Origin: Macrostomum lignano
Lineage: Eukaryota
Length of the DNA stretch: 64,000 nucleotides
Direction of reading: 5' to 3'
NCBI GenBank assembly: GCA_002269645.1
Contig: NIVC01000037.1
Span: forward strand, 620,001 to 684,000
In this document: positions 10,477 through 56,899 of the stretch, piece by piece
How the letters are laid out: each line of letters begins with the position of its first letter
Numbering within the stretch: the first letter of the stretch is position 1
Translations under genes and position numbers: made by a program
The notes under the pieces: generated by a model
Seen by the model: the letters and a program-made list of their open reading frames with translations, nothing else
What the model was told of the DNA's origin: nothing
Databases searched by the model: none

Positions 10477-11461
<985 letters not shown>

Positions 11462-25395: not shown

Positions 25396-26378
25396 TACAA
25401 GAAACAATCAAAAAGTTCAGTCACTTTCCAAACTAAAATGCAACTGTTAATCATCCTGCACTTTCTCAACAAAGTTCCCACGCAGTGATATGCACTTGGC
25501 CCAGCGCTCTGGTAGCTTCTGAATGTCCGCACCTCTTCTCTTTGAACCTCTTTCTCCTCCTTCAGCTGGTGCAGTGTGACAGGAGTCTCGCGTGACCGTC
25601 CGCTTCTCAGGCAGCTCACTCAGCAGTACTCTTTTCCGATCCCAGAAGATGGTGCCCATCCGCTTCTTCATCGATGGCACTGTCTTGGCCTCCAGCGGTG
25701 GGGGGCTCATCGGGGCGATTCCACTGCTTGCTTTGAACTTTGGTCTCCGGCTCGTACATCGATTCGACTCGACATCGACTCGTCTCCCGTCAAGACAGAG
25801 TCGAGAAACTCCTCTTGGCGGTATTTGATCAGGTGGAGCAGGTGCTGAAAAGTCTGCATCTGGAGCCAGGAGTTTCGGCACGCATATGGCACAAACCTTC
25901 AACATTCCCAGTTGGGCTGGACAGCACGCTGCCATAACTGATGCCACAGGCCTCTGCTATCTCAGCAATAGTCACTCGCCTGTCCTCGTCAAAAAGGCTC
26001 TGGACATTGGCGACGACACTCTGGCTGGTGGAGGTCCTGGGTCTGCCACTGCGAGGTTCATATTCGAAGTCACCTTCGCCTTCTTCGAAACTGTGAATCC
26101 AGCGGATCATGGTGCGATATGAAGGCGCAGACTTGAGTTCCTTTGTTGCTGTGCTCAGCCTGGCACGTATGGCTTGGCTTGAAACTGATATAGACACTCA
26201 TTGGTAGTGAAGAAAAATGTAGTAGATTCTCGAGCTAAGCAAGACTGGCTTCAAAAATCTGTTTAAGTAGGAGACATACTCGTAATTAGTCTATAGTAAC
26301 AACTACAATAAATTTAAGGAAAAGCCCTATGTGTAGAAATAATTAAGCAGTAACAGAACTTTTTGATCATCCCTCATA
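25396..26378 (-). mobile_element. Internally deleted, decayed mariner transposon
   Basis: TA-bounded TIRs TACAAGAAACAATCAAAAAGTTCAGTCAC (25396) and reverse complement TATGAGGGATGATCAAAAAGTTCTGTTAC (26378). Transposase pieces RW..SFEEG..D.EYEPRSGRP, DRRVTIAEIAE, CVPKLL, VLTGDES, KRMGTIFWD, LPERWAKCISLRGNFVEK; the HDNA and YSPDL regions are missing. Confidence 0.88.
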
Positions 26379-28839: not shown

Positions 28840-31800
28840 TCATCCTGCATTGTTGCCTGCCCTTCCAGCCGCTCCCTGTACCGTGAAGGTGTTCATAGCG
28901 TTGGCGAGGTCGTCAACTCTACCTGGTCCGTGCTGGGCCAGCAGAATCATCTGAAAACGGAGAGGTTGGTGATGAACAGATAATGAAGTTCGTCAGTTCA
29001 CTGTCCTATTTAGCCTCAAACTAAAGAAACTCCTTAGGAACTCAAGAATAAATCAATAGTAAATATGAAGCCCATGCAAAACAACGGCCACCTTGCTGCC
29101 GAACACGAACAGCAGAGTGGTAGTCGAGCAGATGATGATGCAAGCTGCCACCAGCACGAATCGAAGCGTGGCCTGGCTGTTGGGCAGGACGTAGCTCAGC
29201 GACACTCCGATGGCGGCCATGATGAGCGTGTTGTACACGCAGATGCCGATCTGCCTGCTGTCGTTCAGCGCCTCCACCTTTATTTTGCGAGTCTCCCAGG
29301 CAAAGAAGATGCCGAAGATAAGGATGAGACCTGGTAATTAGGAGCGGAAAATTTCCACCAGACTGACTCTAATTTTGATTTGAGGACAAGCTTCATGAGC
29401 ACATGCCGGATGCTCACTTGTATGTGTATATGATTATTAACAATATTATAGGCGGCAAAATTAACTGTGATGATGTATTAGTCTCTTCTTTAGTCTAATT
29501 GTCTATCTCTGTACCCTACTATTCGAGAAATATTTTTCCAGAGTAAATTACCCTTAATTGGCCCTATTTCCCGTGCGCATGATGTGTCAGAAAGTGCTAG
29601 GATCACTGCCAGAAGCTCCTACCTTTAATGCCTACAAGAACTCCGTTCCAAACTCCCGAATTGTCCGAGCGACAGAACTCAAGTCGCTGCCTGTAGATCA
29701 CCCCGCGCTCTGGGTCCTCCTAAATTGGTTTTTAAAAACAAATGCGTACAGTGCTACACACTTGTAAATTTTCCGCTACTATTGTCAAAATTTTCTCTTC
29801 TATGCCTAAACAATATTCACGCTCGTACCACTGAAGGAAGCTGGAATGCACCCAGTTCCATTGGGTCCAGGCCAAGCCACAGGAGGAGAAGCGCGGCGTC
29901 CAGCAGCAAGAGAACCGCAACAACCGAGAAAAGATGCCAATCTTTAATAGCCTGGATGAAAGTGCGATTTATATTTTAGAAGGCAATAATAGAAAAAGAA
30001 ATAAAATGATTGCTTGTAATAAGAAAAGCCACTCACCACTCGCTTGAGGCGCTTGTTGGTGAAGATGACGTGCACCCGCCACGTCTTGGCGAACATGGCC
30101 CCAAACGCACACGAGTATCCAGCAGCCAGACAGCAGGTCTGAGTCCAGCACAGAGACACCCCCGTGAAGCTGCCGCCATTCAGAGCCATCGCGATGCAGC
30201 TGCAGTAGCCGAGCACACAGCCGAGAGCGATCACGAGATTCACGTTCGGAGAGCTCATCTTGATCAGCTTCAGATTTCGGTACCACAGGTTGACGCACAC
30301 CGACACGACAGCGAAGCCGATTCCCACTGCGCACAGGACGAGACAGGTGGTGCTGGCAGACTGGCTGACCATGATTCTCTCGTTCAGCACCACCGGAGAG
30401 TCGATCGGAGGCTTGTCGCCAGCGAACTGCAGACTCTGCTTCCACACCGTGACGTTTGTAGCGGGGTCGAAGTTCGCGACAGGGACGGCTACATTGTCTG
30501 AGGGTTGAGGGACAGTTTTAAGTGAGCCTTGCTGGGCTTGCAGCGAGCTTTCTTTGGCATGGCAATGCGTCACAATTCGACTGATACCTCGGATTTGAAA
30601 GACCACGACCTGTCCGATGCGGTCTCCGTTCTTGTCGAACTGGACGGGGCCCTGAAAAACAATGTGGCAAAGAAAAAGTGCTTTGAGTTAAATGGTACTA
30701 CGATATTTTCTTATTTTTATCCAAAACTCATTTTGAATAACCAGTAGCTGCATTCAGGGAAAAAATGTTTTGATATGAGTAGTAACTGAGAAATCTATCT
30801 TTTAGCGCTTTTAAAGCATTTTTTTATATTTTTAACATACTTCCAGACCATGGAAGTTCTGACTGCGAATGTGTTCCAGAAGGCTTGTTTTGAAAGAGCT
30901 GTTTCCGAGGTCTAGGCTGGAACTATAGTCATGCAGCTGGAGGGTGTCGTTGATGGCCAGGGCCGCAGTGGTGAGGGTGTCGAACACGCGAGCCACCGAG
31001 TTGTTGCTAGATGTCCATTGGCCAAACTCTGCCTTATAGTCAGCGAACAATTCGTCCATTGTCTGAAGTTTATTTACGCTCATATGTGATTTAATAATTA
31101 GTCATTATTATACTAAAGTGACCAGTCATGATTCCATTGTCTTACAAGCCCCGTGTTAGTTGGTGGCGCCTTGAAGTTTGGATTGGCCATGGCTGTATCA
31201 AAGATGATCGCATTTTGCACAGCTTTGCTCTTCATTTCCAGGGTACAGTCCCCCGTTGGGGCTGTAGCTGGCAGGCCATGCCATCCGCTGAAAATCCACT
31301 GGTACTTTGGACCAAACAAGTTGTACTGAAAAATCTAGTTTTTTCAAAGTTTGGGATTGTTAAACTAGATATCAGTGAAGTGGCAGCCTAAGTATTAAAT
31401 AAGCAGTTTTTCATTGTCACAGCAGACTGTAACTTCTGACTAGGAAAAAATCCTTCAAAGAGCTGCATGGTTTAAAAGTTGATAACCGCGGATTGAGAGT
31501 CGCGGGGTGAGGCAAAGTTACACTGGATCGTACATGATACGGTCACAAAGAAGCTGAATTTCATTGAGGCTACCCGTTTTGACACGACACGAAGCACTTT
31601 GGATGCACTTACGAGGCATTCCATTGGCTCCGCTTCTATCGATGAATAGCGAAAAGCAACAAATATTCGGACGTCATCGACCTGAAAATTGATGCAAAAA
31701 ATGGAAGCATTCTGAGGAACAATGATTTTGAAACAGTTTCCTGAAAATGTGCAAACCTTCATTCTCTCAATAATGTCGCGTAGGGTGCTAGTGAAAAGAC

Positions 31801-32687
31801 CCTTGTAGACAATGGTGATGTTGCTGGCTGCGATGACAGTCTCGAAACTGATTCCAACCTGTATTTATCAAATAAATGTTTCGTCATGAGTTGCGAAATT
31901 GTGGATTAAATATTCTGCAAGCAGAGACTGACAAACCGGATAAATCTGATCGGCCTCCGTAATTAACAGACCAATTTTGCGCCACTTGTGTTTGATTAAA
32001 ATTTGTTTGATTTGCTCATTGTACATCGCATGCGTCATGAAGAGCCGTGTGTAGGTAGTGTACATCGATTTGTCTGACAGAAGTGGCGACGCGTTCGCAT
32101 AGGACAACTGTCAAGTTTATAGACGAAGGAAGTAAGTAGTGCTGGTATGAGAGTAGTCATTTTGACTGCTTTGTAATGAATAAAACTAAATGCACCGGCA
32201 GTCCTGCACTCACAATCGGAACATGGTAGAGCCTGCAGACATCGGCCACGACCTGAGACTGTTGTGAAAATAGTATGCCCAGAATAAGAGCCTTGTTCGG
32301 CTCTTTGAAGTAGCCTTCAATGAACGCCTTGGTGGCGCTGCCGGTGTCTTCCTGGAATGAATCGTAAACTGTTTGATGCGTGTTAATTCATCGGCATTAA
32401 TCGGTTATACAAAAACTTACGTCTAGTGCGCACTGGTAATGTATTTTAAGTCGAAACGTTGGAAATAAGTCGGTTCGATTGTTGATGTAGGGCAGGTAAA
32501 ACCTAAGCGCAGTCTCCTGCACTCTGCGCTCACCACTGGGCATCACGGTGCAGATATTGAGCAGCGCAATTTCAGTTCTGTTGTCGTCAGAAGCAACCGG
32601 ATCTGACGCAACATCACAAGTCACGACTGTCCAAGCAAGGCTGGACAGAAGCCAGACAGTCAGGTTGCGAGTTTCGCCGCACAGCAT
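28840..32687 (-). CDS. GABA-B-receptor-like class C GPCR, copy A (13 exons, about 750 aa)
   Basis: Exons 32687-32421, 32351-32214, 32107-31937, 31858-31757, 31681-31613, 31334-31146, 31062-30841, 30651-30588, 30497-30037, 29951-29829, 29719-29623, 29330-29092, 28950-28840; continuous frame. Signal peptide, Venus-flytrap region (LSYANASPLLSD, GPKYQWIF.GW), no cysteine-rich domain, 7TM motifs typical of GABBR (IKMSSPNVN, GAMFAKTWRVH.IF, IKG|LILIFGIFFAWETR, ALNDS.QIG..VYN). Confidence 0.9.
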
Positions 32688-34773
32688 CCAAGAATAGTGT
32701 TACTCAAATTTGCTCTTAATCGAGCCGGTATAATGAGAAAAGGAACAAAAACTCAGTCTCATCAGCTGATGAATAGTTGCCAATCTAGCAAGTTGAACCC
32801 CCTATTCCATCACTGATTGGTTAGTACTGAGCAATGCAAAGTAGCCAATCAGATCTGTAGTTTTAGCAGCAAAAATCAGCAATTTTTCGATAGCAGAGAT
32901 TCAGAGCTCAACCACAGAGTTCCCGTTCAAAATTTTAACCATCGTTATGCATCGTATGGTGGCGCAGGCTGATCAGCTGAGCACTGTTGTGAGACAGATT
33001 GAAGCCTTCAGGGTTCAACAGTCAACCGAATTCCGACTGACTACCTTGCAAGAGATGCAGAAAATTGCAGAAAATTCCTGCATGTAATATTTTAACCACA
33101 TCACTGGTGGGGATAGCTCGCTCTCAGCCGTCAGATCTGCTTGACGCGCTTGGAACAGAATCAGTGCGACAGCATCTAAAGCCTGCATGACCTTACATGA
33201 CCAACACGAGCCTTTTGAAGAGCTACTAAAACTATGGCTAGAATACCAGCTACTCCTGTGACTCAATTTTGGGATCTAGAAATTGAGATCCAAGGAGAGA
33301 GAAGAATACTCGTAGTTTACTGTATAGTTTTAAACTAGTGAAAGATCTGCAGATGAACAAAACCTACTTAGACTTGCCGTGTAAATGTTTTGGTTAAAGT
33401 TGGCGAATTTTCTTTCTAAATAATCAGACCCATTAAAGAGAATATCAAGGTCGTTGACTTCATTTTCTGTACGCAGGTTTTTTATAGAGTTAAAGGCTTA
33501 CAAAAGCAAATAAAATCAGCATGTAGAAGGCCTACAAAAATTGAGTACAATTGTAGAACTATTGTTCCCGCAAAAAATCCTTTTTAAAGCTTTTTATTTG
33601 CATATCATTTGAATTATCGGTACAAGCGTTGGTTTGGATCCCAGCAGCGTACTTCATGACAAAAATTGACGAATAAAACAAGAGATGCAATGTAATACTT
33701 TTTTATTTTCGGTTAGGGAACGTAAATAGTCAGTTTTAGACAAAAAACGCTAATGTAGGGGGTCATTAGTTGTCTCGGTTTTCATTACCTGCTCCTCTGC
33801 TTGGAAATCAATCGCCTCGATCACAGATACTAAAATGACTAGATGGGCCACGCCGGCATATATTTAGTAAAACAGCTTTCTTCAGTAGCAAAGAAGAATA
33901 CATAAGCTATTTTATAAAAATAAAGTCAGCTGAAAGGACTTTAAGAGGTTTAGAAGCCCAAGCTTGCAGGCGTAAACAACTTGCTAATTGGTTCAGCAAT
34001 AATGTACATTAGCCAGTCCACTGAAATGTACATCGCAGCTTTAGGCTGGAATTCCGAGAAAGGCAATAAAATTTGGGGCGGGGCGGGGGGTAGTGTGGAA
34101 AGGCGCGGTTGGGGTTTAAGCTCGGGGGTACGGGCTAAGAGCTAATAAATGAGCCTTGTCTCAGGGACTACTAATATAAGATAGTGAAAAAACGGATTTC
34201 TATGTTCAATAATAAATTCTAGGGAGCACTAGAAAAAACCAGCGTCCAACTTTTTCTGCATGATTTGGCCAGTTTCCCGTCCCGTGTTTTAGTAGTCCCT
34301 GGCTTGGCTTTAAAATTCATAAAAATTACTTTTGTTTAACGTACTACTGAACTGAAAGTAGCTTACACGCGAATGTATTGAGTGGCCCATCTTAGTTATT
34401 CTAGTATCTGCGGTCTCGATAAGCGTGCCGGACCAACTCTTAATTTACATTGCAAGGTATTGACAAGTCTCAGCAATTCACAACATTGAAACCTAATCGG
34501 AGAGCCATTGAAAACCATTGCAAAATTTTAGTATCATTCGATACGGCTTTTAAAAGCGAACTTCAAGAGACGAACTTCGAGAGAGAGCACTGAGCAATCA
34601 ATGCAAAACTGAATGGAAAATTATGAAATTGAATGTCAGCTCGCCGAAATAGAGTGCGAGTTATGTTCAAATTAAACTGAAGAAGGTGTACACAGATCTT
34701 TTCACTCCTACCAAATTTCTGATACTGCTTACTGATGCTTCAATTTCGATTGTTGGACAGCACTATGGTACAA

Positions 34774-34855
34774 GAGTGTCTCTTGTTAGACAGGGGTGTC
34801 TCTTGTTAGACAAAGGTGTCTCTTGTTAGATAAGGGTGTCTCTTGTTAGACAGGG
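34774..34855. repeat. 20-bp tandem repeat x4
   Basis: GGTGTCTCTTGTTAGACAGG-type unit. Confidence 0.9.
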
Positions 34856-35026
34856 AGGGAAAGCGAGTGAACTAATTGATCTGGCAGAATTTTCCAGCTT
34901 CGTCTTTACTGATATGGAACAATCAATGCGAAAAAGAAGCTAGGAGGCTGGCGATAAAAATAGACTCGGGAGGCTGACGGTTTTACTTTTAGCGCGTTAC
35001 TATGTTAAAAGACCTTGAGGTCTGGA

Positions 35027-35260
35027 GCCAGGAGCGTCGCCACCGGGGGACAGGGGGTCACGTCTCCCCCAGTAAAAGCTATGGGGGGGCATAATAGTTT
35101 GAACCCATCGCCCACATTGGAAATCAATAATTTTGCTTCAGAGCGCCAAAATAGAGAGCCTTAAGCGCCAAAAACGAGTGTCTGTGGCGCCAAAGTGAGT
35201 GCTTGGTTGCGGCACCAAAATAAGTGCCTGCGGCGTCACAGCGAGTGCTAGCAACCCCGA
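35027..35260. mobile_element. Fragment of a non-autonomous element related to 41032-41337
   Basis: Begins CCAGGAGCGTCGCCACCGGGGGG, which matches the reverse complement of the end at 41310-41337, and carries degenerate GGCGCCAAAA.GAGTGC repeats complementary to the 21-bp repeats at 41119-41290. Confidence 0.45.
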
Positions 35261-36038
35261 TTCCCCAAATAATGTAGGAATTAGTCATGTAAGTACTCGT
35301 AGAATTCTTGGCTTTCAGCCTCCTCCCCTTCTACTATAAAATCCATGCCGAGGACCCTGCCTGGAACTTTAAAATTCAACTCTTTGAAAGCAGACAGAAG
35401 TGACGCTAAAGCGTTACAATCGAACGTACTCAATCCCAGTGAGGAGAGCTGTGGTTTATGATGGAGGAAAATCTTTCAATTTTTTTAAATTCACTGACAA
35501 TTTGCAGCTGCATACGTGTAGTCTAAATGACAATATTTAGTTAACTTCTCGTTGCTCACTTTTTACGTTTTTTCACAAAAGAATAGTTTAACAATACATT
35601 GTTTCTCAGTTTTTTGTGACAAAAGCTACATTTCTGGTGAGAGTTCTAAGTTTTCTATTTGTGCATTAAATTTAGTTACTACGAGTAATTTAGGTACACA
35701 GTAATCCAAAAGCCTCTAAAAGAATCGCATGAATTCTATAATCATCTACGACAAATCTAAGGCGCTCAACGCGTTTCTAGCGAACCTACTTCCTACAATA
35801 CTCGTGAGCCTTGCACACAAAAATATTCTGAATAACTAAAAACCAAACCTATGACTAAAACTACGCTTAATTATGCTCAATTCTAGAAATCTATCTGCTA
35901 GCTAAATTTTCGAGAACAACGGAAATTGAGTCTTTTCATTGTTATAATTTTTTGCAAGCAACTGGACGTTGCATGGATTCCAAACTTCAGACTGTTATTT
36001 CAAAAAGCCCCTCGTCCAATTCGATCTCGAGTCTTGAC

Positions 36039-39000
36039 TCAGCCACTGGTCTCCGCAGCATTAGCCGTGACGCCTTGGGTGGTGCCCGGCATCGCAAACG
36101 TGTTCATGGCGTTGGTGATGTCGTCAACTTTTGTGGGCCCGTGTTGAATCAAAAGAATCATCTGAAAAAATATCGAGTTGTAAAGTATAATTGAAGGACG
36201 ATGGACACCTCGAGTACAAGGACCGCTACACTCGTACATCATACAGATTTCGAAAAGATTTGCTCTTTGCATAGCGCTGAATGCGGCTTCAAAATAGAAA
36301 AATTCAGCCAAGAAAAATCCATCTAAAACGATGCATCTCAACTACAGCATTTCTATGACAGAGTATGGTTCTTTATAGAGCTCGCAGCTGACTACCACCA
36401 GCTACACTAAAGGCTTCAACGGCACCACCTTGCTGCCGAACACGAGCAGCAGAGTGGTAGTCGAGCAGATGATGATGCACACGACAACCAGCACGAATCG
36501 AAGCGTGGCCTGGCTGTTGGGCAGGACGTAGCTCAGCGACACTCCGATGGCGGCCATGATGAGCGTGTTGTACACGCAGATGCCGATCTGCTTGCTGTCG
36601 TTCAGCGCCTCCAGCTGGACTTTGCGAGTCTCCCAGGCAAAGAAGATGCCGAAGATGAGGATGAGCCCTGCAATGCGAGCGAATACAATGGAATGTCGGG
36701 GTGACATGACAGTTATGATTATAATAATTTTTGGGGTCCCTTGACACGAAGGCTACCCTGCAATCAGGTCGAGAAAAGCATGATTGTCATTTTTCAAATC
36801 ATTCAGCTAAACTGATGTTTTGCGAACTCGATGTGTCCATTTTATTAACCGACTCAAACCAACTGGAAGCATGAAGACATCCTGCAATCACTCAGATAAT
36901 TAGATGGAAAATTGGACAGCTAAGTTTAAAGGTACCCATTTCTCGATGCTGTTTGCCTATTAAAATAATTGATTGCCCCGAAGCAGCCCATGATGGAAAG
37001 GTTTGCATAAGTGCTCGTTCTCTCAAGGCGATGAAATAGCATAATTATTTTGCATTTATATAAATAGCTTGCATGAAGCTAGAACAATGCAGAGATCTGT
37101 TGAAAAACACTAGTGTGCAAGATGTTCACCACCTTTGATCCCAAGAAGAATTCCATTCCACAACGTGGTCAATCCAGACTGGCAGATTTCCAGGAAAGGC
37201 TTGTATAGAACTCCGAGCTGCGAGTTCTCCTAGAATTGAGAAGGTCCTGAAAGTCACCTTTATGTACAGAGGAATGGCAGAAAAATGCTCGGCTAAAATG
37301 CTTTGAGACGCACCCTTTTTGGAAACAGATGCAGCTCCAGCTGCAGTGGATCCAGAATAGACCAGATGACGAAAACCACAGCATCGAGCAGTAAGAGAAT
37401 AGCAACCACAGACAGCAGGTGCCAGTCCTTAATAGCCTGAAAAAAACATTCCAACAAATTCAAGCGATGCATCAAATACTAAAAGGATGGCAAATGGTCG
37501 ACTTCAAAAAAAAATTGCAGTGAAGAACCTTTATGAAAAAGATCGAATTCCAATATTCTAATTATCAAGACGACATGTAAACTTAGCTGCTTATACTGAA
37601 GGATGACAACTCACCACTCGCTTGAGGCGCTTGTTGGTGAAGATGACGTGCACCCGCCACGTCTTGGCGAACATGGCCCCAAACGCACACGAGTATCCAG
37701 CAGCCAGACAGCAGGTCTGAGTCCAGCACAGAGACACCCCCGTGAAGCTGCCGCCATTCAGAGCCATCGCGATGCAGCTGCAGTAGCCGAGCACACAGCC
37801 GAGAGCGATCACGAGATTCACGTTCGGAGAGCTCATCTTGATCAGCTTCAGATTTCGGTACCACAGGTTGACGCACACCGACACGACAGCGAAGCCGATT
37901 CCCACTGCGCACAGGACGAGACAGGTGGTGCTGGCAGACTGGCTGACCATGATTCTCTCGTTCAGCACCACCGGAGAGTCGATCGGAGGCTTGTCGCCAG
38001 CGAACTGCAGACTCTGCTTCCACACCGTGACGTTTGTAGCGGGGTCGAAGTTCGCGACAGGGACGGCTACATTGTCTGAGGGTTGAGGGGTCAGTTTTAA
38101 GTGAGCCTTGCTAGGCTTGCAGCGAGCTTTCTTTGGCATGGCAATGCGCTACAATAAGACTGTTACCTCGGATTTGAAAGACCACGACCTGTCCGATGCG
38201 GTCTCCATTTTTATTGAACTGTACAGGACCCTGGAAGAAAAAGATATTTCAGTGTGTTTCAGCTTATATTACTCAAGTAAAGTACTTCACTGACAAAGTT
38301 CACCGACAAAGTTAAGATCACACGCTGTTTCCTCTCTTAGTATTCCTTCTATCAGAGTTTCTCAAATGCTCGATTCCCGATACTTTGAATCTGGTTATTT
38401 TGTACTTTTTTTCTGGCAGTCAATTAGCTCCTTACTATTGAGAACTGAAGTGAGTACGGTGTCCGTACAGTAGTTGTGATATGGTTCATCCTAGCTCGTA
38501 ATTAAATAATTAGAGATCAAGTAACGAATATGGCAGCGAAATGACGTGATGTGATGTACGAGCTACATAAGCGAGAATTGAAAGTCACCTCAACGCCATT
38601 AAAAGTTTGATGGCGAATATTTTTCAATAGGCTCGTCTTAAATGAGCTGTTTCCGAGTTCCACTACAGGACTGTACTCGTCACGCTTCAGCGTTTCGTTA
38701 ATGGCCAGGGCAGCAGTTGTTAATGTGTCGAACATGCGAGCTGCCGAGTTGTTGCGTGAAGTCCATTCACCGTACACTGATTTGTATGCGTTGTAGAGGT
38801 CATCGAGGCTCTGAAATCCGAACACGTGTAAGGTAGGCGTGCTAAAACAATTAAAATCACTGGTGCCTCAAGACTCTTCCCAACCGTCATCAAATGAAGC
38901 CGATTTCCATGTGATCACACTGCTTTTAGATAACTTTTTGACGTTTTGTACATCAGGCAAGTGATTTGATGTATGTGCAGTTGATAGCGGTGTGAACGAG

Positions 39001-40615
39001 GGCTCAGTGCTCAATTGTTTTTTCCTCTTACCAGGCCAGTTATGCTGGGTGGCGGCTTGTAGTTGGGTTCGGCCATCGAGGAGTCAAAAATGATTGCGTT
39101 GTGCACCGCAGCTTTCCTCATTTCCACTGTGCAATCACCAGCCGGTGTTGTAGCCGGTAAACCGTGCCATCCGCTGATTATCCATTGGTACTTTGGGCCG
39201 AAAAAGTTGAACTTATATATCTGAAAAAATGAATACCCTTGATTTATGATTTATAGTTAAGTTGTAATTGGAACTACGAGTATTCTGGATAGCCGTCGAA
39301 ACACTTACCAGACACTCCAACGGTTCGACCTCTAGAGAAACATAACGAAAGGCAACGAATATCCGGATATCATCTGCCTGGAAGTGAAGAAACCCCCCAC
39401 GGTTTTGTCTCCACCAAATATGCAAAGTTTTAAACTAATTTTTTGCAAATTCTATACACTTTAAATAGGAATAACTGCACAGTAAACGCGTATAGCTTAC
39501 TATAAGGCGCTGCATCATCTCTTGGCTTGTGGTTGTGTAGAGCACCTTGTACAAAACCGATATATTTCTCCTGGCAATCAGATTTTCAAATTCAATTCCA
39601 ACCTGAAAATTGGAACTTTAACAGCTGTACTTTTACTAGTTAAGTAGACCCTGAGCCCTAGATCTAGGCGAGATCTCTAGAGGCGATTGGCTGTTTTTCG
39701 TCACGAGCAATTTAACTCCCTGTTTATGTCGCTCATGGAAATTAACCAATTGAAACCCGGATGCAGGACGAATACTAACCGGGTAGATCTGGTCGGCCTC
39801 CGTGATCAACAGGCCAATCTTGTGCCACTTATGCTTTAGCAAGATCTGGACGATCTCCTCATTGTAGAGCCCGTGCGTCATAAACAGCCGACTGTAGGTT
39901 CGGTAGCGAGTCTTGTCCGACAGCAGCGGCGACGCGTTGGAGTAGGCCAGCTGAAAGACGAGGGACAGACGGTCTGTGAATAGGCAGCCAGATTTAAAGT
40001 AACAATACGATTTAATTTTCTTTTTATTCAAGACAAGAAGACAACAAAACAGCTCAAAGTATTTTGTATTTCGAGGATTGAAGCATTTTGTACTTCGAAA
40101 TCGCGAGCCGTCAAGCTTAAATTTAATCTGTCAAGACGCTTATAAGCTGTTTACCTCAACTCGAGAAAACTCACCATGGGGACATGGTAGAGCTTGCACA
40201 CGTCGGCCACTACCTGAGACTGTTGCGAGAAAAGAATCCCCAAAATCATAGCTTTGTTTGGCTCGCTGAAGTAGCCGTCGATAAACGCCTTCGAAGCGCT
40301 GCCTTTGTCTTCCTGCAGATGGATTTATTCATATTGTACGATCAAATATGCCAGTATATTTCAGTTTTAATAACTCACATCGATAGCGCACTGATAGTAA
40401 ATCTTGAGCTTGAATGTCGGGAACAAGTCAGTCAGGTTGTTGATCAGCGGCAGGAAGGCTCTGAGCGAGAGCTCCTGAAACCTTCGTTCTCCAGAAATCG
40501 GCCTTACGGTGCAGATGTTGAGCAGAGCAACCTCAGTTCGGTTGTCCTCAGCTTCGCACTGCTCAATCAGGCAGACCGCTGCACTGAACAGCAGCAGGTG
40601 GCGCCAGAGACACAT
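36039..40615 (-). CDS. GABA-B-receptor-like class C GPCR, copy B (13 exons, about 744 aa)
   Basis: Exons 40615-40379, 40312-40175, 39950-39780, 39602-39501, 39377-39309, 39220-39032, 38810-38589, 38230-38167, 38075-37615, 37436-37314, 37229-37133, 36667-36429, 36161-36039. Internal exon lengths (138,171,102,69,189,222,64,461,123,97,239) equal those of copies A and C; open frame throughout. Confidence 0.9.
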
Positions 40616-41031
40616 GCAATTTTGTCTTTGTATTAGGAATTTTTTTAATACTGAACTCGATTTGCTGAGATTTTTCGCGCGGCAGAATTACTGAGTCATT
40701 ATTATGCTCTTGGATTTACAAAGACTAATTGAGCCTGGATTTGTTCGGATCAGTAGTCACTTTTATGACTTTTATGCAACATGTGGCCTTCTTGAAAAAG
40801 TTCTCTGATTGGATCTGGACGTTACAGCCGGTTATTGGCCAAAATGGCGGATCAAAGAAACGTTTTGTTGGGGAAAAACTACGAGCATATTTCTCCAAAA
40901 GACTTCCCTGTACAGAAGTTGTAGCTCGTATGGTCCTACTCACGACTGGCTTAAGTAAGATGTCAAGACTTTTAATATGCGCAAATATGGTTGAAAGAGC
41001 TGAATAAATATCCATTCTTGGTATGTACTTC

Positions 41032-41337
41032 CTGGGGCGCCATGGATTTCATGGTGGGGGGACAAAGCCAAGAGTTCTACATGATTAAATTCCTACATTG
41101 TTTAAGGAATCGGTGTTGTTAGCACTCATTTTGTCGCCGCAGGCACTCATTTGGCGCCACAGGCACTCATTTTGTCACTGCAGGCACTCATTTTGTCACC
41201 GCAGGCACTCATTTTGGCGCCGCAAGCACTCATTTTGTCACCACAGGCACTCATTTTAGCGCCGCAGGCACTCATTTTGGCGCTGCAGGCACTATGCTTT
41301 GTCCTGCCCCCTTCCCCCCCCGGAGGCGACGCACCTG
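41032..41337. mobile_element. Non-autonomous element with internal 21-bp tandem repeats
   Basis: About 8 copies of GCAGGCACTCATTTTGGCGCC (41119-41290) between GC-rich ends; related copy in opposite orientation at 35027. Confidence 0.45.
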
Positions 41338-41376
41338 TGTACCACCACCTCCTGCGGATTCAAAGATGCAGTTCCA

Positions 41377-42249
41377 GGCGTTTCCCTTCCGGCGTTTCCC
41401 TTCCGGCGTTTCCCTTCCGGCGTTTCCCTTCCGGCGTTTCCCCTTGCTGTTTCTTCTCTGGTTGAGGTTCCACTGACTGGGATTCCACTGACTGGGATTC
41501 CACTGACTGGGATTCCACTGACTGGGATTCCACTGACTGGGATTCCACTGACTGGGATTCCACTGACTGGGATTCCACTGACTGGGATTCCACTGACTGG
41601 GATTCCACTGACTGGGATTCCACTGACTGAGATTCCACTTACTGGGATTCCACTGACTGAGATTCCACTGACTGGGATTCTACTGACTGGGATTCCACTG
41701 ACTGGGATTCCACTGACTGGGATTCCACTGACTGAGATTCCACTTACTGGGATTCCACTGACTGAGATTCCACTGACTGGGATTCTACTGACTGGGATTC
41801 CACTGACTGGGATTCCACTGACTGGGATTCTACTGACTGGGATTCCACTGACTGGGATTCTACTGACTGGGATTCCACTGACTGGGATTCCACTGACTGG
41901 GATTCTACTGACTGGGATTCCACTGACTGGGATTCTACTGACTGGGATTCCACTGACTGGGATTCCACTGACTGGGATTCTACTGACTGGGATTCCACTG
42001 ACTGGGATTCCACTGACTGGGATTCCACTGACTGGGATTCCACTGACTGGGATTCCACTGACTGGGATTCCACTGACTGGGATTCCACTGACTGGGATTC
42101 CACTGACTGGGATTCCACTGACTGGGATTCCACTGACTGGGATTCCACTGACTGGGATTCCACTGACTGGGATTCCACTGACTGGGATTCCACTGACTGG
42201 GATTCCACTGACTGGGATTCCACTGACCGGGATTCCACTGACTGGGATT
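41377..42249. repeat. 14-bp repeat (about 5 copies) followed by 15-bp minisatellite (about 52 copies)
   Basis: GGCGTTTCCCTTCC, then GGGATTCCACTGACT; source of the GIPLT and ESQSV ORFs. Confidence 0.98.
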
Positions 42250-42630
42250 TCTCTAAGCTACGTCAGCCTTATGTACACTGTTTATACCGGACTCAGAGCA
42301 GCTTCATACTCAATCACTGTACGACTCAACTCTTCTCCATTCATCATATAAACTGTCTACTCGCAGTATCTCAACCTAGATTAAAAAATCAATTGCTCAT
42401 CTGTTTTATTTATTTAAGCATGCTCTGTTCTGCCTCTTCGCATCCTACAATTACTACTTCGAAAGTAGAGTAAGCAAAAGACGATAGTTGTGCATTGCAG
42501 GTGCGTTTTAATGCTGCTAAATTCTCTAATAGTGGGCAAATAGAGCCCTTTGTGTATTTTGTGCCTGCGCATTTTTTAAATTGAAGCTAACAAAAATTCT
42601 CTAATTAACAGCAGCAACTCTGTCTCTCAG

Positions 42631-42946
42631 AAACTAAAGCTACTCTCGCTGTTAACTAAAGCTACTCTCGCTGTTAACTAAAGCTACTCTCGCTGTTAAC
42701 TAAAGCTACTCTCGCTGTCAACTAAAGCTACTCTCGCTGTTAACTAAAGCTACTCTCGCTGTTAACTAAAGCTACTCTCGCTGTTAACTAAAGCTACTCT
42801 CGCTGTCAACTAAAGCTACTCTCGCTGTTAACTAAAGCTACTCTCGCTGTTAACTAAAGCTACTCTCGCTGTTAACTAAAGCTACTCTCGCTGTTAACTA
42901 AAGCTACTCTCGCTGTAAACTAAAGCTACTCTCGCTGTTAACTAAA
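42631..42946. repeat. 22-bp minisatellite, about 14 copies
   Basis: AACTAAAGCTACTCTCGCTGTT. Confidence 0.97.
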
Positions 42947-43129
42947 ATCTACTAAAGTCTAAAATCTAAAGTCTAGAAGCTACCAATCGAAAGTATCACC
43001 AAAGAAAATCGTTAATTACCAAGCATTTGCTCTTCAACAGTTCAATAATTAAACTGAGTTTGTCTTCCGCTCCCTCAGTTTCAGGACTTCAATCGCTCCA
43101 GCGGCGCACGCGATTCGCTTTGAACCTGG

Positions 43130-46100
43130 CTAGTTGCCACTGGTTCTCTCGGCATTAGCGGGGGTGCCCGGCATCGCAAACGTGTTCATGGCGTTGGTGA
43201 CGTCATCAACTTTCGTGGGCCCGTGTTGGATTAAAAGAATCATCTGAAAAATGGAATTGAAACCTGCATGACATTCTGAAAGCTGAGAGCCCGATGATTC
43301 GTCCGTAAATGACTACATTGAGCTTCAATGGCACCACCTTGCTGCCGAACACGAACAGCAGAGTGGTAGTCGAGCAGATGATGATGCACACGACAACCAG
43401 CACGAATCGAAGCGTGGCCTGGCTGTTGGGCAGGACGTAGCTCAGCGACACTCCGATGGCGGCCATGATGAGCGTGTTGTACACGCAGATGCCGATCTGC
43501 TTGCTGTCGTTTAGCGCCTCCACCTTTATTTTGCGAGTCTCCCAGGCGAAGAAGATGCCGAAGATGAGGATGAGACCTGCAATGCAGTGAAAAAACGAAA
43601 AGTTGAACCTGAGATTTCTGGAACTCGGTAATTAGCCATTCTATCAGGACTGGTTAGGACTAATTTTGAGAGTCAACCTGATCATAGCTCTGCTATGAGG
43701 CCGATACATGTAGTTAAAACTGCTTCTAGTTGGTAATTTGCTCAACTAGTATCCCCATAGTGCAAAGCTTTGGTAGTCCGAAGGGTGACATAATGAGCGC
43801 CGTGATAAAGAAGAAAAATGACATAATGACATGCGGCTGCCTGGTGTAATAACCCGCTGAAAAACCACCTGGATAAGCAGGCGAAAGCCTTCATCGTTAG
43901 AAACGCAGTCTTACTGACGAGCCGGTACAATAGACTTCACCTTTAATGCCCAGAAGAATTCCATCCCATATGGCGGCCATTCTAGACCGGCAAGCTTCAA
44001 GGCGCGGCTTGTAGATTATTCCGAGTTCAGGGTTCTCCTTAAATTTGTTGCGTGCGTTGTTTCAGAAATTGCGGTGCTTTTCTTTTAACTAAATTTCTGA
44101 AGACTTTTAGGTACGTACCTCCGGTGGATACAAGTGCACTTGAATATGAATTGAATCCAAGACAGACCAAAGGATGAGAACAGCGGCGTCAAGCAGGAGA
44201 AGAATGCCAACAACGGAGAGTAAGTGCCAGTCTTTTATTGACTGCAAATTGAAAGCAAAAATCTTCTCCAGAAGTTAGCCATAAAAATTTTATGCTCGAA
44301 ACAATTGCTCAAGACTGGTCTGGGAAAGGTCAACCACTCACCACTCGCTTGAGGCGCTTGTTGGTGAAGATGACGTGCACCCGCCACGTCTTGGCGAACA
44401 TGGCCCCAAACGCACACGAGTATCCAGCAGCCAGACAGCAGGTCTGAGTCCAGCACAGAGACACCCCCGTGAAGCTGCCGCCATTCAGAGCCATCGCGAT
44501 GCAGCTGCAGTAGCCGAGCACACAGCCGAGAGCGATCACGAGGTTCACGTTCGGAGAGCTCATCTTGATCAGCTTCAGATTTCGGTACCACAGGTTGACG
44601 CACACCGACACGACAGCGAAGCCGATTCCCACTGCGCACAGGACGAGACAGGTGGTGCTGGCAGACTGGCTGACCATGATTCTCTCATTCAGCACCACCG
44701 GAGAGTCGATCGGAGGCTTGTCGCCAGCGAACTGCAGACTCTGCTTCCACACCGTGACGTTTGTAGCGGGGTCGAAGTTCGCGACAGGGACGGCTACATT
44801 GTCTGAGGGTTGAGGGGACAGTTTTAAGTGAGCCTTGCTAGGCTTGCATCGAGCTTTCTTTGGCATGGCAATGCGCTACAATAAGACTGTTACCTCGGAT
44901 TTGAAAGACCACGACCTGTCCGATGCGGTCTCCGTTCTTGTCGAACTGGACGGGGCCCTGAAAAAATATTTATTTTCACAGCTTCGACAGTTCTGAAACT
45001 TACATTCTTGTCGACTAGGATTCAGACCTTGGATTAGTGTATGAACTTAAGCGACAATTATAGCTCAATCTCTCTCCCGATTTCCATACATTGTTTTGCT
45101 CTTGTTTTCATTCCACATTGGTTTTTTATCACTATCATATTTCACGTACATGTAGCTCACTATACTATTGATCACTACAAAAAATCCATCCCAAGGGGTT
45201 TTTAGTCACCTCTACGCCATTGAATTTTTGTTTGCGAATATTCTGCAGTAGACTCGTTTTGAAGGAGTTGTTTCCAAGCTCCAGACGAGGGCTGTAGTTG
45301 TACAACTGCAGCGAATCGTTGATGGCGAGGGCAGCCGTTGTCAGTGTGTCGAACAGTCTAGCGGCCGTGTTGTTACCTGTGGTCCATTCCCCAAATGCCG
45401 CCTTGTAAGCTCCATAGATGTCATCCAGTGTCTAAAGCAAATCAAAGTTTCATTTGCAGGGTCAGACAGGCCAATATTTTTAATAACAGCTCCATTTTCC
45501 CGGATTTTCTGTCGATGAAACTAATTAAATATTCTAATATTTACTGTAAAAGGTAATGCTCATGCTGCCTTGGAGAAAAGACTCAATTGTTCCTTTGATA
45601 ATCTCACCACCGTCGTTTTGCTGGGTGGAGGCTTGTAGCTAGGGTCAGCCATTGCGGAGTCAAACAGTATGGCATTATGCACGGCAGTTTTCCTCATATC
45701 CAGTGTGCAGTCTCCCATCGCTGAGGTAGCTGGCAGGCCATGCCACCCACTGAAGATCCATTGGTACTTTGGTCCGTAGAGGCCGTGCTTGTAAATCTGT
45801 TGGTGACGAATATTTATCATCACCATCATAGATATCAACATCGAGAGTTTTGGAAAACGAATCGGAGTCTTCCAGCTGCGACTTACCTCGCATTCCAACG
45901 GCTGGGCTTCGATGGAACGGTACCGAAAAGCCACGATTATTCTCACATCCTCGTCCTGAAATCATTTCAGAAAATATATTGATGGAACTCAGTTTCAATT
46001 CATTGCAGAGGAAAATTTCCAGCCAACCATATTCGCCGTATGTCACTTATTCTTACTACCCTTAATACCTTTAAACGCTGGATAATCTCTTTCGTATCGC

Positions 46101-47416
46101 CAGTAAAAAGCGCCTTGTACAGGATCGAAATGTTTCGTTCGGCGATTAGAGTTTCAAAATTGACTCCAACCTGAAATATACAAAAAACTTTGCGTTTGTC
46201 GAGTAATTGCATGAATTTGATTCCCAGTTGACCTAGTCAGGCATATCTTGCTCAAACAAGCACGAAACAATAACTAGGCGCAACTGGACATCCACGACTG
46301 GCCAAGGAATAAAACAGTGTGGTGTCAAATCGCTTAAAGTTGAGGGTCCCTATAGTAAGTGCTTCAACCCAGCTTGGTCTGCAGTGGGTCAACGTAGCGA
46401 GCCACCCGTTCTGTCAGCATTAGGACGTCCCGCAGCGGCTCAGGGCAGTAAGGCTTGCTTATGGCCATGCTAAGTACACAACATTCAGCTGCGCCTCGTG
46501 CGCCTAACCAATATCACATCAGACACATCATCACGAACCGGGTAAATCTGGTCGGCCTCCGTGATCAACAGGCCAATCTTGTGCCACTTATGCTTCAGCA
46601 GGATCTGGACGATCTCCTCATTGTAGAGCCCGTGCGTCATAAACAGCCGACTGTAGGTTCGGTAGCGAGTCTTGTCCGACAGCAGCGGCGACGCGTTGGA
46701 GTAGGCCAGCTGAAATTAAACACTTGAAATGTTTCTTGAAAGCATACGATTCTCCCAGTGTCCGTGCATCCACCAGCTGCTTTTTGGAGGATGCGCAACC
46801 TTCATGGATTACAAAAGTTACTTTGTGAGCATATTATTCAACCCAAAGCTTATTATTTAAATTATGTATGTAGATGGGATTAATAAAATTCTTGAATTTG
46901 CACATAAAAAATATTTTTTGTTGAATTACAACAGCTCAGACAGTTTCAACTACTCACCATCGGCACATCGTAGAGCTTGCAAACGTCGGCCACGATCTGC
47001 GACTGCTGCGAATAAGTTATGCCAATAATGACAGCCTTGTTCGGCTCCTTGAAGTATCCATCTATGAACGCCTTGATGGCGCTGCCCGTGTCCTCCTAGA
47101 AAGTTTCGTGCTCATGAAATTTGAAAAAAGACAACGGAATTAAACAAAAAAATTCTGATCGATGATGCAACCATCTCACATCGATAGCGCACTGATGGTA
47201 AATCTTGAGCTTGAATGTCGGGAACATGTCGGTCAGGTTGTTGATCAGCGGTACGAAGGCCTTCAGCGCGAACTCAAAGAACTTGTGCTCACCAGTGACA
47301 GGGCTCACCGTGCAGATGTTAAGAAGAGCAACCTCGGTTCGATTATCTCTGGCGCAGCACAGAACTGTCAGATTGGCAGCTGCGCACACCTGGAGCAGGC
47401 AGCGCCAGAGTTGCAT
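43130..47416 (-). CDS. GABA-B-receptor-like class C GPCR, copy C (13 exons, about 741 aa)
   Basis: Exons 47416-47180, 47095-46958, 46709-46539, 46170-46069, 45955-45887, 45796-45608, 45431-45210, 44957-44894, 44802-44342, 44241-44119, 44037-43941, 43576-43338, 43243-43130. Same exon lengths and phases and same GABBR-type motifs as copies A and B. Confidence 0.9.
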
Positions 47417-56858: not shown

Positions 56859-56899
56859 CTGGGCTTACAAGGGACAAAACAGTATGAAACTGCTCGAAA

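What the first reader, a model, noticed from the sequence alone, without database searches (positions are those of the whole stretch)
30037..44957. Mosaic homogenisation (gene conversion) across the GPCR paralogs, including intronic DNA
Seen in sequence: the 461-bp exon 9 appears identical in A (30037-30497) and B (37615-38075) even at silent sites (the off-frame ORF translations in the track match), and C differs at about 2 positions. The small intron 8 is also nearly identical in all three, while neighbouring introns and exons 10/11 cannot be aligned or are very divergent. The pattern is patchwork. In intron 8, C matches B (GCGCTACAATAAGACTGTTACC). At the 5' end of exon 8, C matches A (CCGTTCTTGTCGAACTGGACGGGGCCCTG). 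Exon 3 is near-identical in B and C only (about 3 differences in 171 bp) and diverged in A. In exon 12, C has A's RKIKVE but B's VLVVVC. Conserved silent and intron sites cannot be explained by protein-level selection, so recurrent ectopic conversion or unequal crossover is inferred.
Basis: partly seen in the sequence, partly recalled or inferred. Interest (0 to 1): 0.7.

Follow-up and report, generated by a model that had tools for sequence, protein, structure and literature searches.

The report
Gene conversion among three receptor paralogs
Three old, tandemly duplicated GABA-B-like receptor genes keep a few exons (and one tiny intron) almost letter-for-letter identical by copying DNA from one another, while the rest of each gene has diverged beyond recognition at silent sites; this is a very clean new example of a well-known process, not a new kind of biology.

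Summary
The window holds three intact, same-strand (minus), 13-exon class-C GPCR genes: A 28840-32687, B 36039-40615, C 43130-47416. Each has a Venus-flytrap domain plus 7TM, and all are GABA-B-like. In most exons synonymous divergence is saturated (dS>1), and 11 of 12 introns are no more alike than shuffled sequence. In contrast, exon 8-intron 8-exon 9 (about 630 bp) and exon 12 (239 bp) are 95-100% identical in all three genes. B and C also share exon 3, the 3' end of exon 1 and the 5' part of exon 13. The tracts end within a few bases of exon edges. They have raised GC3 (0.82 vs 0.58) and a strong AT-to-GC asymmetry. Their few differences fall in tight clusters that pair A=C, B=C or A=B in turn. 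Between species, exon 9 is no better conserved than unconverted exon 10, so protein constraint cannot explain the pattern. An independent genome, Macrostomum lignano (the closest relative found), shows the same exon-limited 100% identity between tandem copies. Recurrent GC-biased interlocus gene conversion is the best explanation. Unequal crossover is not needed. This is a new member of a known kind, of moderate-to-low interest.

The parts
28840..32687 (-). Gene A: intact 13-exon GABA-B-like class C GPCR, 747 aa. Exons (high..low): E1 32687-32421, E2 32351-32214, E3 32107-31937, E4 31858-31757, E5 31681-31613, E6 31325-31146, E7 31062-30841, E8 30651-30588, E9 30497-30037, E10 29951-29829, E11 29719-29623, E12 29330-29092, E13 28950-28840.
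   Evidence: Gene model with GT-AG at all 12 introns and an open frame. Pfam ANF_receptor 1e-32 and 7tm_3 6e-49.
36039..40615 (-). Gene B: intact 13-exon paralog, 741 aa. Exons (high..low): E1 40615-40379, E2 40312-40175, E3 39950-39780, E4 39602-39501, E5 39377-39309, E6 39211-39032, E7 38810-38589, E8 38230-38167, E9 38075-37615, E10 37436-37314, E11 37229-37133, E12 36667-36429, E13 36161-36039.
   Evidence: Full-length match to solved GABA-B2 (2e-89) and GABA-B1 (5e-81) chains.
43130..47416 (-). Gene C: intact 13-exon paralog, 738 aa. Exons (high..low): E1 47416-47180, E2 47095-46958, E3 46709-46539, E4 46170-46069, E5 45955-45887, E6 45787-45608, E7 45431-45210, E8 44957-44894, E9 44802-44342, E10 44241-44119, E11 44037-43941, E12 43576-43338, E13 43243-43130.
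30029..30659 (-). Tract 1, copy A: exon 8 + intron 8 + exon 9 (VFT-7TM linker and TM1-TM3). It starts at the exon 8 acceptor and ends about 6 nt past the exon 9 donor.
   Evidence: 98.4% identical to C and 97.5% to B. E9 dS is 0-0.02. Site map.
37606..38249 (-). Tract 1, copy B. Against A and C, full identity starts 24 nt inside exon 8. The first 24 nt carry 7 B-private differences, all A/T in B where A and C have G/C.
44333..44975 (-). Tract 1, copy C. It equals A in the exon 8 5' part and equals B in intron 8. It has 2 private synonymous changes in exon 9.
30498..30587 (-). Intron 8 of A (B: 38076-38166; C: 44803-44893). This is the only intron with detectable similarity between copies.
   Evidence: 92-98% identity with z>30 against shuffles; the other 11 introns have z<3. 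No RNA structure signal, z 0-0.5. No Rfam match.
29082..29333 (-). Tract 2, copy A: exon 12 (TM5-ICL3-TM6-TM7).
   Evidence: 94.1% identical to B and 96.3% to C. dS is 0.07-0.11. Clustered private differences: RKIKVE vs RKVQLE, VAAC vs VVVC.
36413..36676 (-). Tract 2, copy B: exon 12 plus the first ~17 nt of intron 12, which are shared with C only.
43322..43585 (-). Tract 2, copy C: exon 12.
39774..39956 (-). Tract 3, copy B: exon 3, homogenised with C only. The identity is bounded by the acceptor and the donor.
   Evidence: 97.8% to C over 183 nt. 3/171 differences, dS 0.08, against dS 2.5-3.4 to A. GC3 is 0.86 against 0.60 in A.
46533..46715 (-). Tract 3, copy C: exon 3.
36078..36169 (-). 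Tract 4, copy B: 5' part of exon 13 (proximal C-tail), shared with C only.
   Evidence: 93.5% to C 43160-43251, against 76-78% to A. Alignment.
43160..43251 (-). Tract 4, copy C: 5' part of exon 13.
40379..40450 (-). Tract 5, copy B: last ~72 nt of exon 1, shared with C (47180-47251).
   Evidence: 74 aligned nt with 3 mismatches, 95.9%. Alignment.
47180..47251 (-). Tract 5, copy C: last ~72 nt of exon 1.
37133..37436 (-). Escaped island in B: exons 10-11 (TM4 + ECL2), lying between tracts 1 and 2. A: 29623-29951; C: 43941-44241. It is saturated at silent sites and fast at the protein level.
   Evidence: 59-72% nt identity, dS 0.85 to saturated, dN 0.25-0.40.

Best explanation
Three ancient tandem paralogs of a flatworm-type GABA-B-like class C GPCR undergo recurrent, GC-biased interlocus (non-allelic) gene conversion. 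Conversion now happens only in 'islands' where enough sequence homology survives.

The islands are:
- Exon 8 + the 90-nt intron 8 + exon 9, in all three genes.
- Exon 12, in all three genes.
- Between B and C only: exon 3, the end of exon 1 and the start of exon 13.

Proposed mechanism. A break in one copy is repaired from the homologous exon of a neighbouring copy. The copied tract cannot run into the flanking introns, because those no longer align, so tracts stop at exon edges. The tiny intron 8 sits between two homogenised exons and is carried along. Mismatch repair favouring G/C has raised GC3 in the islands. Exons that drifted or were selected apart fell below the homology needed for conversion and escaped. 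These are most of the ligand-binding flytrap domain and TM4/ECL2. The result is a self-reinforcing mosaic. Several events with different partners and end points are needed: A=C in the exon 8 5' part, B=C in intron 8, A=B in exon 9.

Shown: the identity pattern, silent-site and intron homogenisation, tract edges, GC bias, clustering of differences, and the parallel in M. lignano.

Inferred: the repair mechanism, recurrence over time, the homology-threshold escape, and any selective benefit.
For: 1. dS is 0-0.02 in E9, 0.07-0.11 in E12, 0.08 in E3 (B-C) and 0 in E8 (A-C). It is >1 or saturated in E2, E4-E7, E10 and E11.
2. Identical runs reach 509 nt and 169 third positions, against simulated maxima of 59 and 28.
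3. Intron 8 has z>30; the other 11 introns have z<3.
4. The tracts are internal islands with unalignable DNA on both sides, and their edges lie within ~6 nt of splice sites.
5. GC3 is 0.82 in homogenised exon copies against 0.58 elsewhere (Fisher 6e-29; copy B alone 3e-13). The same exon 3 has GC3 0.86 in B and C but 0.60 in unconverted A. The AT-to-GC asymmetry is 33:5 in the tracts against 133:98 in control exons.
6. Private differences are clustered (P<1e-5) and change partner along the tract.
7. Constraint control. Between species, E9 is 50% aa / 52% third-position identical and E12 is 53-56% third-position identical. That is similar to unconverted E10, yet within the window E9 is 100% aa identical against 54-61% for E10.
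8. Independent genome. M. lignano tandem copies g1 and g2 are 100% identical over 227 nt of the E12-equivalent. Their E10, E11 and E13 are 64-77% identical and their introns unalignable. GC3 is 0.76 against 0.45-0.66.
9. All three genes are intact, so this is not pseudogene decay.
10. The same signature is the accepted diagnostic in fish protocadherins (PMC1852091) and TLR1/TLR6 (PMC2077338).
Against: - No reads were available, so perfect identity could be slightly inflated by polishing.
- No orthologous array from a close relative was available. The classical test (paralogs cluster within species in the tracts, orthologs across species elsewhere) could therefore not be done. Against M. lignano, all exons cluster by species.
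- With three sequences and no usable outgroup (third positions ~53% identical to M. lignano), donor and recipient direction and true shared-derived conflicts cannot be established.
- A standard polymorphic-site GENECONV-type permutation is significant only for B-C (0/10000). A-C gives 243/10000 and A-B 1170/10000. The reason is that tracts homogenised in all three copies contain no polymorphic sites.
Confidence: 0.85

Rival explanations
1. Assembly or polishing artefact. Reads from the three copies were collapsed or cross-mapped, so a consensus was written into all copies.
For: Perfect 481-nt genomic identity between A and B is the sort of thing multi-mapping polishers can produce. No reads were available to check. 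No independent copy of the sequence exists in the metagenome collection or in the protein libraries.
Against: - Polishing can only erase a few differences between copies that are already near-identical. It cannot turn ~70% identity into 95-100%.
- Paralog-specific variants survive inside the tracts.
- Tract edges coincide with exon edges, and the tracts carry an evolutionary GC3 and AT-to-GC signature.
- 1-2 kb minisatellite arrays are resolved in the window, which suggests a long-read assembly.
- The same pattern occurs in an independent M. lignano assembly.
Confidence: 0.04
2. Selection on the nucleotide sequence itself keeps the tracts identical without any copying. The constrained element could be an overlapping antisense ORF, a structured RNA or mirtron in intron 8, or a dense splicing or regulatory code.
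For: Long antisense and off-frame ORFs span exon 9 in all three copies. Intron 8 is conserved.
Against: - Off-frame ORFs are expected in GC3-rich coding DNA.
- Intron 8 folds no better than shuffles, z 0-0.5.
- No Rfam family matches at the gathering threshold, and the only matches below it (E 0.35 and 0.57) lie outside intron 8 and exon 9.
- The same exons are only 52-56% identical at third positions between species, so no such constraint acts on them.
- Exon 3 is homogenised in B and C but not in A.
Confidence: 0.03
3. Unequal crossing-over or recent partial segmental duplication replaced blocks of the genes, rather than short non-crossover conversion.
For: Tandem same-strand arrays are the classical substrate. 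B and C share more tracts than either does with A. B and C are somewhat closer overall, 82% aa against 76%.
Against: - Each tract is a 70-630 bp island with unalignable introns on both sides.
- Spacers between the genes share no homology apart from small interspersed repeats.
- Exons 10-11, lying between tracts 1 and 2, are saturated.
- A crossover would homogenise everything distal to the breakpoint.
Confidence: 0.04
4. RNA/cDNA-templated conversion. Spliced transcripts of one paralog are reverse-transcribed and used as repair templates, which would naturally confine tracts to exons.
For: - Single-exon tracts (E3, E12) end at splice sites.
- In the spliced mRNA, the B-C E12 and E13 tracts are contiguous: 318 nt at 96%.
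- In M. lignano, copy g2 has precisely lost intron 11 at the edge of the identical tract.
Against: - Intron 8 is homogenised together with its exons, so at least tract 1 was copied from genomic DNA (or from unspliced RNA).
- All 12 introns are retained in all three window genes.
- The first ~17 nt of intron 12 are shared by B and C.
Confidence: 0.04

Closest known systems
Regional gene conversion in clustered protocadherin variable exons (fugu, zebrafish, human; PMC1852091 and Noonan et al. 2004 as cited there)
   Same: Tandem receptor paralogs have a divergent ligand/recognition part and a >99% identical membrane-proximal or cytoplasmic part. Identity holds at synonymous sites. GC3 is significantly higher in the homogenised region (41-45% to 54-69% there; 58% to 82% here). 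Homogenisation is lineage-specific.
   Different: Protocadherin variable regions are single large exons, so the tracts there are not exon-bounded and no intron is involved. Those clusters also share true constant exons by splicing. Here each gene is complete, and the 'constant' parts are kept alike only by copying. The protein family and the phylum are different.
TLR1/TLR6 gene conversion in mammals (PMC2077338)
   Same: Tandem paralogs in which the ligand-binding N-terminal part diverges. The transmembrane and signalling part is repeatedly and independently homogenised in different lineages at almost the same region. This resembles the recurrence of exon 12 homogenisation in this window and in M. 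lignano.
   Different: TLRs are essentially single-exon coding regions. There are two copies, not three. The independent recurrence there is shown in nine species with clear orthology; here it is shown in only two genomes without orthology.
Mosaic divergence of tandem paralogs under interlocus gene conversion: theory and reviews (PMC3924837; HMA4 model, bioRxiv 10.1101/2025.10.29.685298; homology-dependent escape from conversion, Walsh 1987, from my own knowledge)
   Same: Predicts the bistable pattern seen here. Segments are either kept near-identical by ongoing conversion or, once diverged by drift or selection, escape permanently.
   Different: Those are general models or plant and human cases. 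The exon-by-exon partition with saturated introns seen here is an unusually sharp instance.
GABA-B receptor subunits GB1/GB2 (solved structures such as 7c7q, 6uo8, 4mqe)
   Same: Venus-flytrap domain, no cysteine-rich domain, a 7tm_3 core and full-length alignability (2e-89 and 5e-81).
   Different: Only ~30-38% identical. The C-tail is short, without the long coiled-coil region. Positions that I recall as GABA contacts in GB1 (Ser153, Glu349) are Ala and Ser/Thr here. The closest relatives are a Macrostomum-type expansion.

Membership tests
Interlocus (non-allelic) gene conversion / concerted evolution | Paralog identity at synonymous and intronic sites far above the locus background | tested here: met
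   dS is 0-0.11 in the tracts against >1 elsewhere. Intron 8 has z>30 against <3 for the other 11 introns.
Interlocus (non-allelic) gene conversion / concerted evolution | Short tracts with diverged sequence on both sides, which distinguishes conversion from crossover or recent duplication | tested here: met
   Tracts are 70-630 bp and flanked by unalignable introns. Saturated exons 10-11 lie between tracts 1 and 2.
Interlocus (non-allelic) gene conversion / concerted evolution | Relationships among copies change along the sequence (mosaic) | tested here: met
   A=C in the exon 8 5' part, B=C in intron 8, A=B in exon 9, alternating patches in exon 12, and B-C-only tracts in E1, E3 and E13. The clustering has P<1e-5. 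Caveat: with three taxa and no outgroup these are clustered private differences, not proven conflicting synapomorphies.
Interlocus (non-allelic) gene conversion / concerted evolution | In the tracts, paralogs within a species are closer than orthologs between species, while orthology is recovered outside the tracts | tested here: inconclusive
   Only M. lignano (49-64% aa) was available, and all exons group by species. A relative-rate control does support conversion: E9 and E10 are equally diverged between species but differ 100% against 54-61% within the window.
Interlocus (non-allelic) gene conversion / concerted evolution | GC-biased signature (typical, not strictly defining) | tested here: met
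   GC3 is 0.82 against 0.58 (P 6e-29). E3 has GC3 0.86 in B and C against 0.60 in A. The AT-to-GC asymmetry is 33:5.
Interlocus (non-allelic) gene conversion / concerted evolution | Tract sequence verified in raw reads or in the population (not an assembly product) | not testable with these tools
   No reads were available. There is no second copy of the sequence in the searchable collections.
GABA-B-type class C GPCR | Venus-flytrap (ANF_receptor/PBP-type) extracellular domain | tested here: met
   PF01094 at 6e-28 to 1e-32 in all three proteins. Aligns to the GB1 VFT at 8.5e-33.
GABA-B-type class C GPCR | 7tm_3 heptahelical domain directly after the VFT, with no cysteine-rich domain | tested here: met
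   PF00003 at ~1e-48. No NCD3G or other domain was reported. The linker is ~45 aa.
GABA-B-type class C GPCR | Long C-terminal coiled-coil tail used for GB1/GB2 heterodimer trafficking | tested here: not met
   The gene models end ~30-40 aa after TM7. The M. lignano relative ends at the same place. A further unrecognised 3' exon cannot be excluded.
GABA-B-type class C GPCR | GB1-type GABA-contacting residues in the flytrap pocket | tested here: not met
   Alignment to 4mqe_A: GB1 'CSS' Ser is kept. GB1 SYGSSSP is SYANASP or AYSNASP here. The Glu of GB1 QEAPLAYD is Ser or Thr here. Which residues contact GABA is recalled from Geng et al. 2013, not tested here.

The most novel reading that the evidence does not exclude
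The homogenised exons act as a selected 'constant module'. Class C GPCRs work as dimers. The idea is that selection favours conversion keeping TM1-3 and TM5-7 (G-protein coupling and dimer contacts) interchangeable among array members, while the flytrap domain and TM4/ECL2 diversify. This would be a functional analogue of the shared constant exons of protocadherin and UGT1 clusters, achieved by DNA copying instead of splicing. It would have arisen in parallel in at least two flatworm lineages, possibly with occasional cDNA-templated events (intron 11 loss in M. lignano g2).
Probability: 0.2. Interest if true: 0.5.

Novelty: new member of a known kind. Interest (0 to 1): 0.3.

Why it matters
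Practical consequences:
- Trees, orthology calls and dN/dS scans for this receptor family will be wrong if whole genes are used. The 7TM exons report the date of the last conversion, not the date of the duplication.
- Short-read assembly or mapping will mis-place reads in these tracts.

Biological interest:
- It is a very sharp natural example of homology-dependent 'escape' from conversion at exon resolution.
- It carries a clear GC-biased conversion signature in a lophotrochozoan-type genome, where such data are sparse.
- The same receptor module is kept uniform in two flatworm genomes, which hints that array members share signalling or dimerisation partners while sensing different ligands.

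Tried and rejected
- **Other copies in the window.** I looked for further copies or donor fragments with tblastn of A, B and C against all six frames. None lie outside the three loci.
- **GENECONV-style permutation on polymorphic sites.** It is significant only for B-C, because tracts shared by all three copies have no polymorphic sites. I replaced it with physical run-length and third-position run tests.
- **Structured RNA or mirtron in intron 8.** Folding z-scores are 0-0.5. Rfam has nothing at gathering threshold. At E<1 there are only two chance-level hits, both elsewhere. Rejected.
- **Search for the same or a sister species.** Three word-indexed protein searches and one exhaustive HMMER search found nothing closer than 49-64% (M. 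lignano). An exact 41-mer scan of the metagenome contigs found nothing. P0004 has no contig on record.
- **Long M. lignano models.** P0006 and P0007 were examined as possible fused tandem arrays. They are chimeras with transposon ORFs and hold one receptor each. They were used only for protein-level segment comparison.
- **Outgroup polarisation.** Polarising the exon 12 patches with M. lignano is too noisy (third positions 53-56% identical), so no direction of conversion is claimed.
- **Antisense and off-frame ORFs across exon 9.** Treated as a by-product of high GC3, not as genes.

Full report
**What is there.** The window is eukaryotic DNA: 45% GC, short GT-AG introns and many minisatellites. 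Self-comparison shows three co-linear loci on the minus strand and no further copies or fragments. I built gene models by three-way alignment.
- Each locus is an intact 13-exon gene: A 28840-32687, B 36039-40615, C 43130-47416.
- All splice sites are canonical. Exon lengths are identical for E2-E12. The frames are open and encode 747, 741 and 738 aa.
- All three proteins have an ANF_receptor (Venus-flytrap) domain and a 7tm_3 domain.
- They align over their full length to solved GABA-B2 (2e-89) and GABA-B1 (5e-81) chains.
- The flytrap domain alone is closer to GB1.
- They lack a long coiled-coil tail. They do not keep two positions that I recall as GABA contacts in GB1. I therefore treat them as GABA-B-like orphan receptors.
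- Nothing in 15 billion proteins is closer than 49-64%. The best hits are all from the flatworm Macrostomum lignano, so the window probably comes from an unsampled platyhelminth. This is an inference.

**Check of the observation.**
- Exon 9 is 461/461 identical between A and B. C has 2 synonymous differences.
- Exon 3 differs at 3 of 171 sites between B and C, but is 74% identical to A.
- In exon 12, C combines A's RKIKVE with B's VVVC.

Identity along the loci is sharply bimodal.
- Most exons are 57-82% identical, with dS from 0.67 to saturated.
- E9 has dS 0-0.02. E12 has dS 0.07-0.11. E3 (B-C) has dS 0.08. E8 (A-C) has dS 0.
- Intron 8 is 92-98% identical (z>30 against shuffles). The other 11 introns cannot be told from shuffled sequence (z<3).
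- The longest identical A-B run in the spliced alignment is 509 nt, with 169 consecutive third positions. The simulated maxima are 59 and 28.

**Anatomy of the tracts.** Tract edges sit within a few bases of splice sites.
- Tract 1 begins at the exon 8 acceptor in A and C. In B it begins 24 nt inside exon 8. It ends ~6 nt past the exon 9 donor.
- The exon 3 and exon 12 tracts are bounded by their own acceptor and donor.
- On the protein, tract 1 covers the linker and TM1-TM3, and tract 2 covers TM5-TM7. The intervening exons 10-11 (TM4, ECL2) are saturated at silent sites, with dN 0.25-0.40.

The few differences inside the tracts are not scattered.
- There are 7 B-private sites within 22 nt of exon 8.
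- There are 8 A-private sites within 74 nt of intron 8.
- There are 4 B-private and 5 A-private sites within 7-nt windows of exon 12 (P<1e-5 to 5e-4).

So the nearest pair changes along the sequence: A=C, then B=C, then A=B. With only three sequences this is formally a set of clustered private differences. The clustering itself rules out simple point mutation after a single homogenisation. It requires several events with different partners or end points.

**Why copying and not constraint.**
1. Silent sites and an intron are homogenised.
2. The same protein segment behaves differently in different copies. Exon 3 is near-identical in B and C and saturated in A.
3. Between species, the homogenised exons are not unusually conserved. 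Against M. lignano, E9 is 50% aa and 52% third-position identical, and E12 is 53-56% third-position identical. That is comparable to unconverted E10 (32-54% aa). Yet within the window E9 is 100% aa identical against 54-61% for E10.
4. Intron 8 has no RNA-structure signal and no Rfam match.

**GC bias.**
- GC3 is 0.82 in homogenised exon copies against 0.58 in the rest (Fisher 6e-29; 3e-13 using copy B only).
- Exon 3 has GC3 0.86 in B and C against 0.60 in A. Exon 8 has 0.76 in A and C against 0.48 in B.
- Where a homogenised pair differs from the unconverted copy, the pair carries G/C and the odd copy A/T 33 times against 5. In control exons the ratio is 133:98.
- This is the accepted signature of repeated, GC-biased conversion. 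It is the criterion used for fish protocadherins (PMC1852091).

**Independent genome.** A 22.7-kb M. lignano locus (L001, NIVC01001840.1) carries three same-strand family members.
- Copies g1 and g2 have the same exon lengths as the window genes for the E10 (123 nt) and E12 (239 nt) equivalents.
- They are 100% identical over 227 nt of the E12-equivalent, ending 3 nt past the donor.
- Their E10, E11 and E13 equivalents are 64-77% identical and their introns are unalignable. GC3 is 0.76-0.77 in E12 against 0.45-0.66 in E10 and E11.
- g2 and a truncated g3 share a 93-100% identical E9-equivalent.
- A different species and a different assembly therefore show the same exon-limited homogenisation in the same receptor module. 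This argues strongly against an assembly artefact. It parallels the independent recurrence described for TLR1/TLR6 (PMC2077338).

**Mechanism.** The best-supported account is recurrent non-crossover interlocus gene conversion between old tandem duplicates, confined to islands of retained homology.
- Flanking introns no longer align, so the copied tracts stop at exon edges.
- The 90-nt intron 8 lies between two homogenised exons and is carried along.
- Exons that diverged, by drift or by selection on ligand binding and TM4/ECL2, fell below the homology needed and escaped. This gives a self-reinforcing mosaic, as theory predicts (PMC3924837; bioRxiv 10.1101/2025.10.29.685298; Walsh 1987 from my own knowledge).
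- Unequal crossover is not needed and does not fit islands flanked on both sides by unalignable DNA.
- cDNA-templated conversion cannot explain tract 1, because the intron was copied too. It remains a minor possibility for single-exon tracts. The precise loss of intron 11 in M. lignano g2, at the edge of the identical tract, is a hint in that direction.
- A polishing artefact cannot be excluded for the last few differences, but it cannot create the pattern.

**Verdict.** The interpretation as gene conversion is supported, with confidence about 0.85. The phenomenon is well known from protocadherins, TLR1/6, opsins, globins and others. This is therefore a new, unusually clean member of a known kind, in an unsampled lineage and in a receptor family where I found no earlier description. 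Interest is moderate-to-low (0.3). The main practical consequence is that whole-gene phylogenies, orthology calls and selection scans for this family will be misleading unless the tracts are masked.

**Limits.** No reads, no sister species, only three copies and no usable outgroup were available. The direction, number and age of the events, and any selective advantage of homogenising the 7TM core, remain inferences.

Noticed in passing
L001 (M. lignano NIVC01001840.1) 834-905 vs 12271-12272: Copy g2 has no intron between the E11- and E12-equivalents. Copy g1 and all three window genes keep intron 11. This is a precise intron loss exactly at the 5' edge of the 227-nt tract that is 100% identical between g1 and g2, which may be a trace of a cDNA-templated event.
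   Followed up: partly
L001 21600-21953: A third M. lignano copy (g3) is only a fragment of the E9-equivalent. It includes ~75 nt of upstream intron, is 93-100% identical to g2, and is interrupted by a short CCGACTGA-type repeat. It is probably a truncated pseudogene that still takes part in, or derives from, conversion.
   Followed up: partly
window 30498-30587 (intron 8 of gene A): In A the intron is 90 nt, in frame and free of stop codons, so retention would insert 30 aa in the VFT-7TM linker. In B and C it is 91 nt with stops. No transcript data were available to test retention.
   Followed up: no
window 28840-47416 (proteins A, B, C): The flytrap domain scores better against GABA-B1 (117 bits) than GABA-B2 (84 bits), while the full-length proteins score better against GABA-B2. 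GB1 pocket positions that I recall as GABA contacts (Ser153, Glu349) are Ala and Ser/Thr here. The C-tail is only ~30-40 aa, with no coiled coil.
   Followed up: partly
window 10473-11461, 16364-17060, 18112-20002, 20450-21197, 41468-42249, 42632-42946, 51985-54487, 55016-55419, 56903-57380, 58277-59616, 60920-62169: The window has an unusually dense set of long minisatellite arrays (periods 4-64 nt, up to 1.9 kb, 79-98% matches). Two of them lie in the spacer between genes B and C. The 25-mer array at 18.1-20.0 kb causes a strong C-over-G skew (-0.6).
   Followed up: partly
window 7730-8530 (-): A long open exon encodes two doublecortin (DCX) domains (Pfam 9e-31). It belongs to an unrelated neighbouring gene.
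   Followed up: partly
window 54509-54946 (+) and 56209-56877 (-): Two convergently oriented ORFs each encode an Ets DNA-binding domain (1e-17 and 4e-15). They may be a second pair of local paralogs. I did not examine them for conversion.
   Followed up: no
window 25447-26197 (-): A mariner/Tc1-like transposase remnant (HTH plus a partial DDE domain), split across two overlapping frames, so probably degenerate.
   Followed up: partly
window 35142-35291 vs 41078-41284 (inverted); 539-669 vs 33963-34090 (inverted): Short interspersed repeat copies, 77-79% identical, lie in the spacers flanking the receptor genes. They are the only similarity between the intergenic spacers.
   Followed up: no
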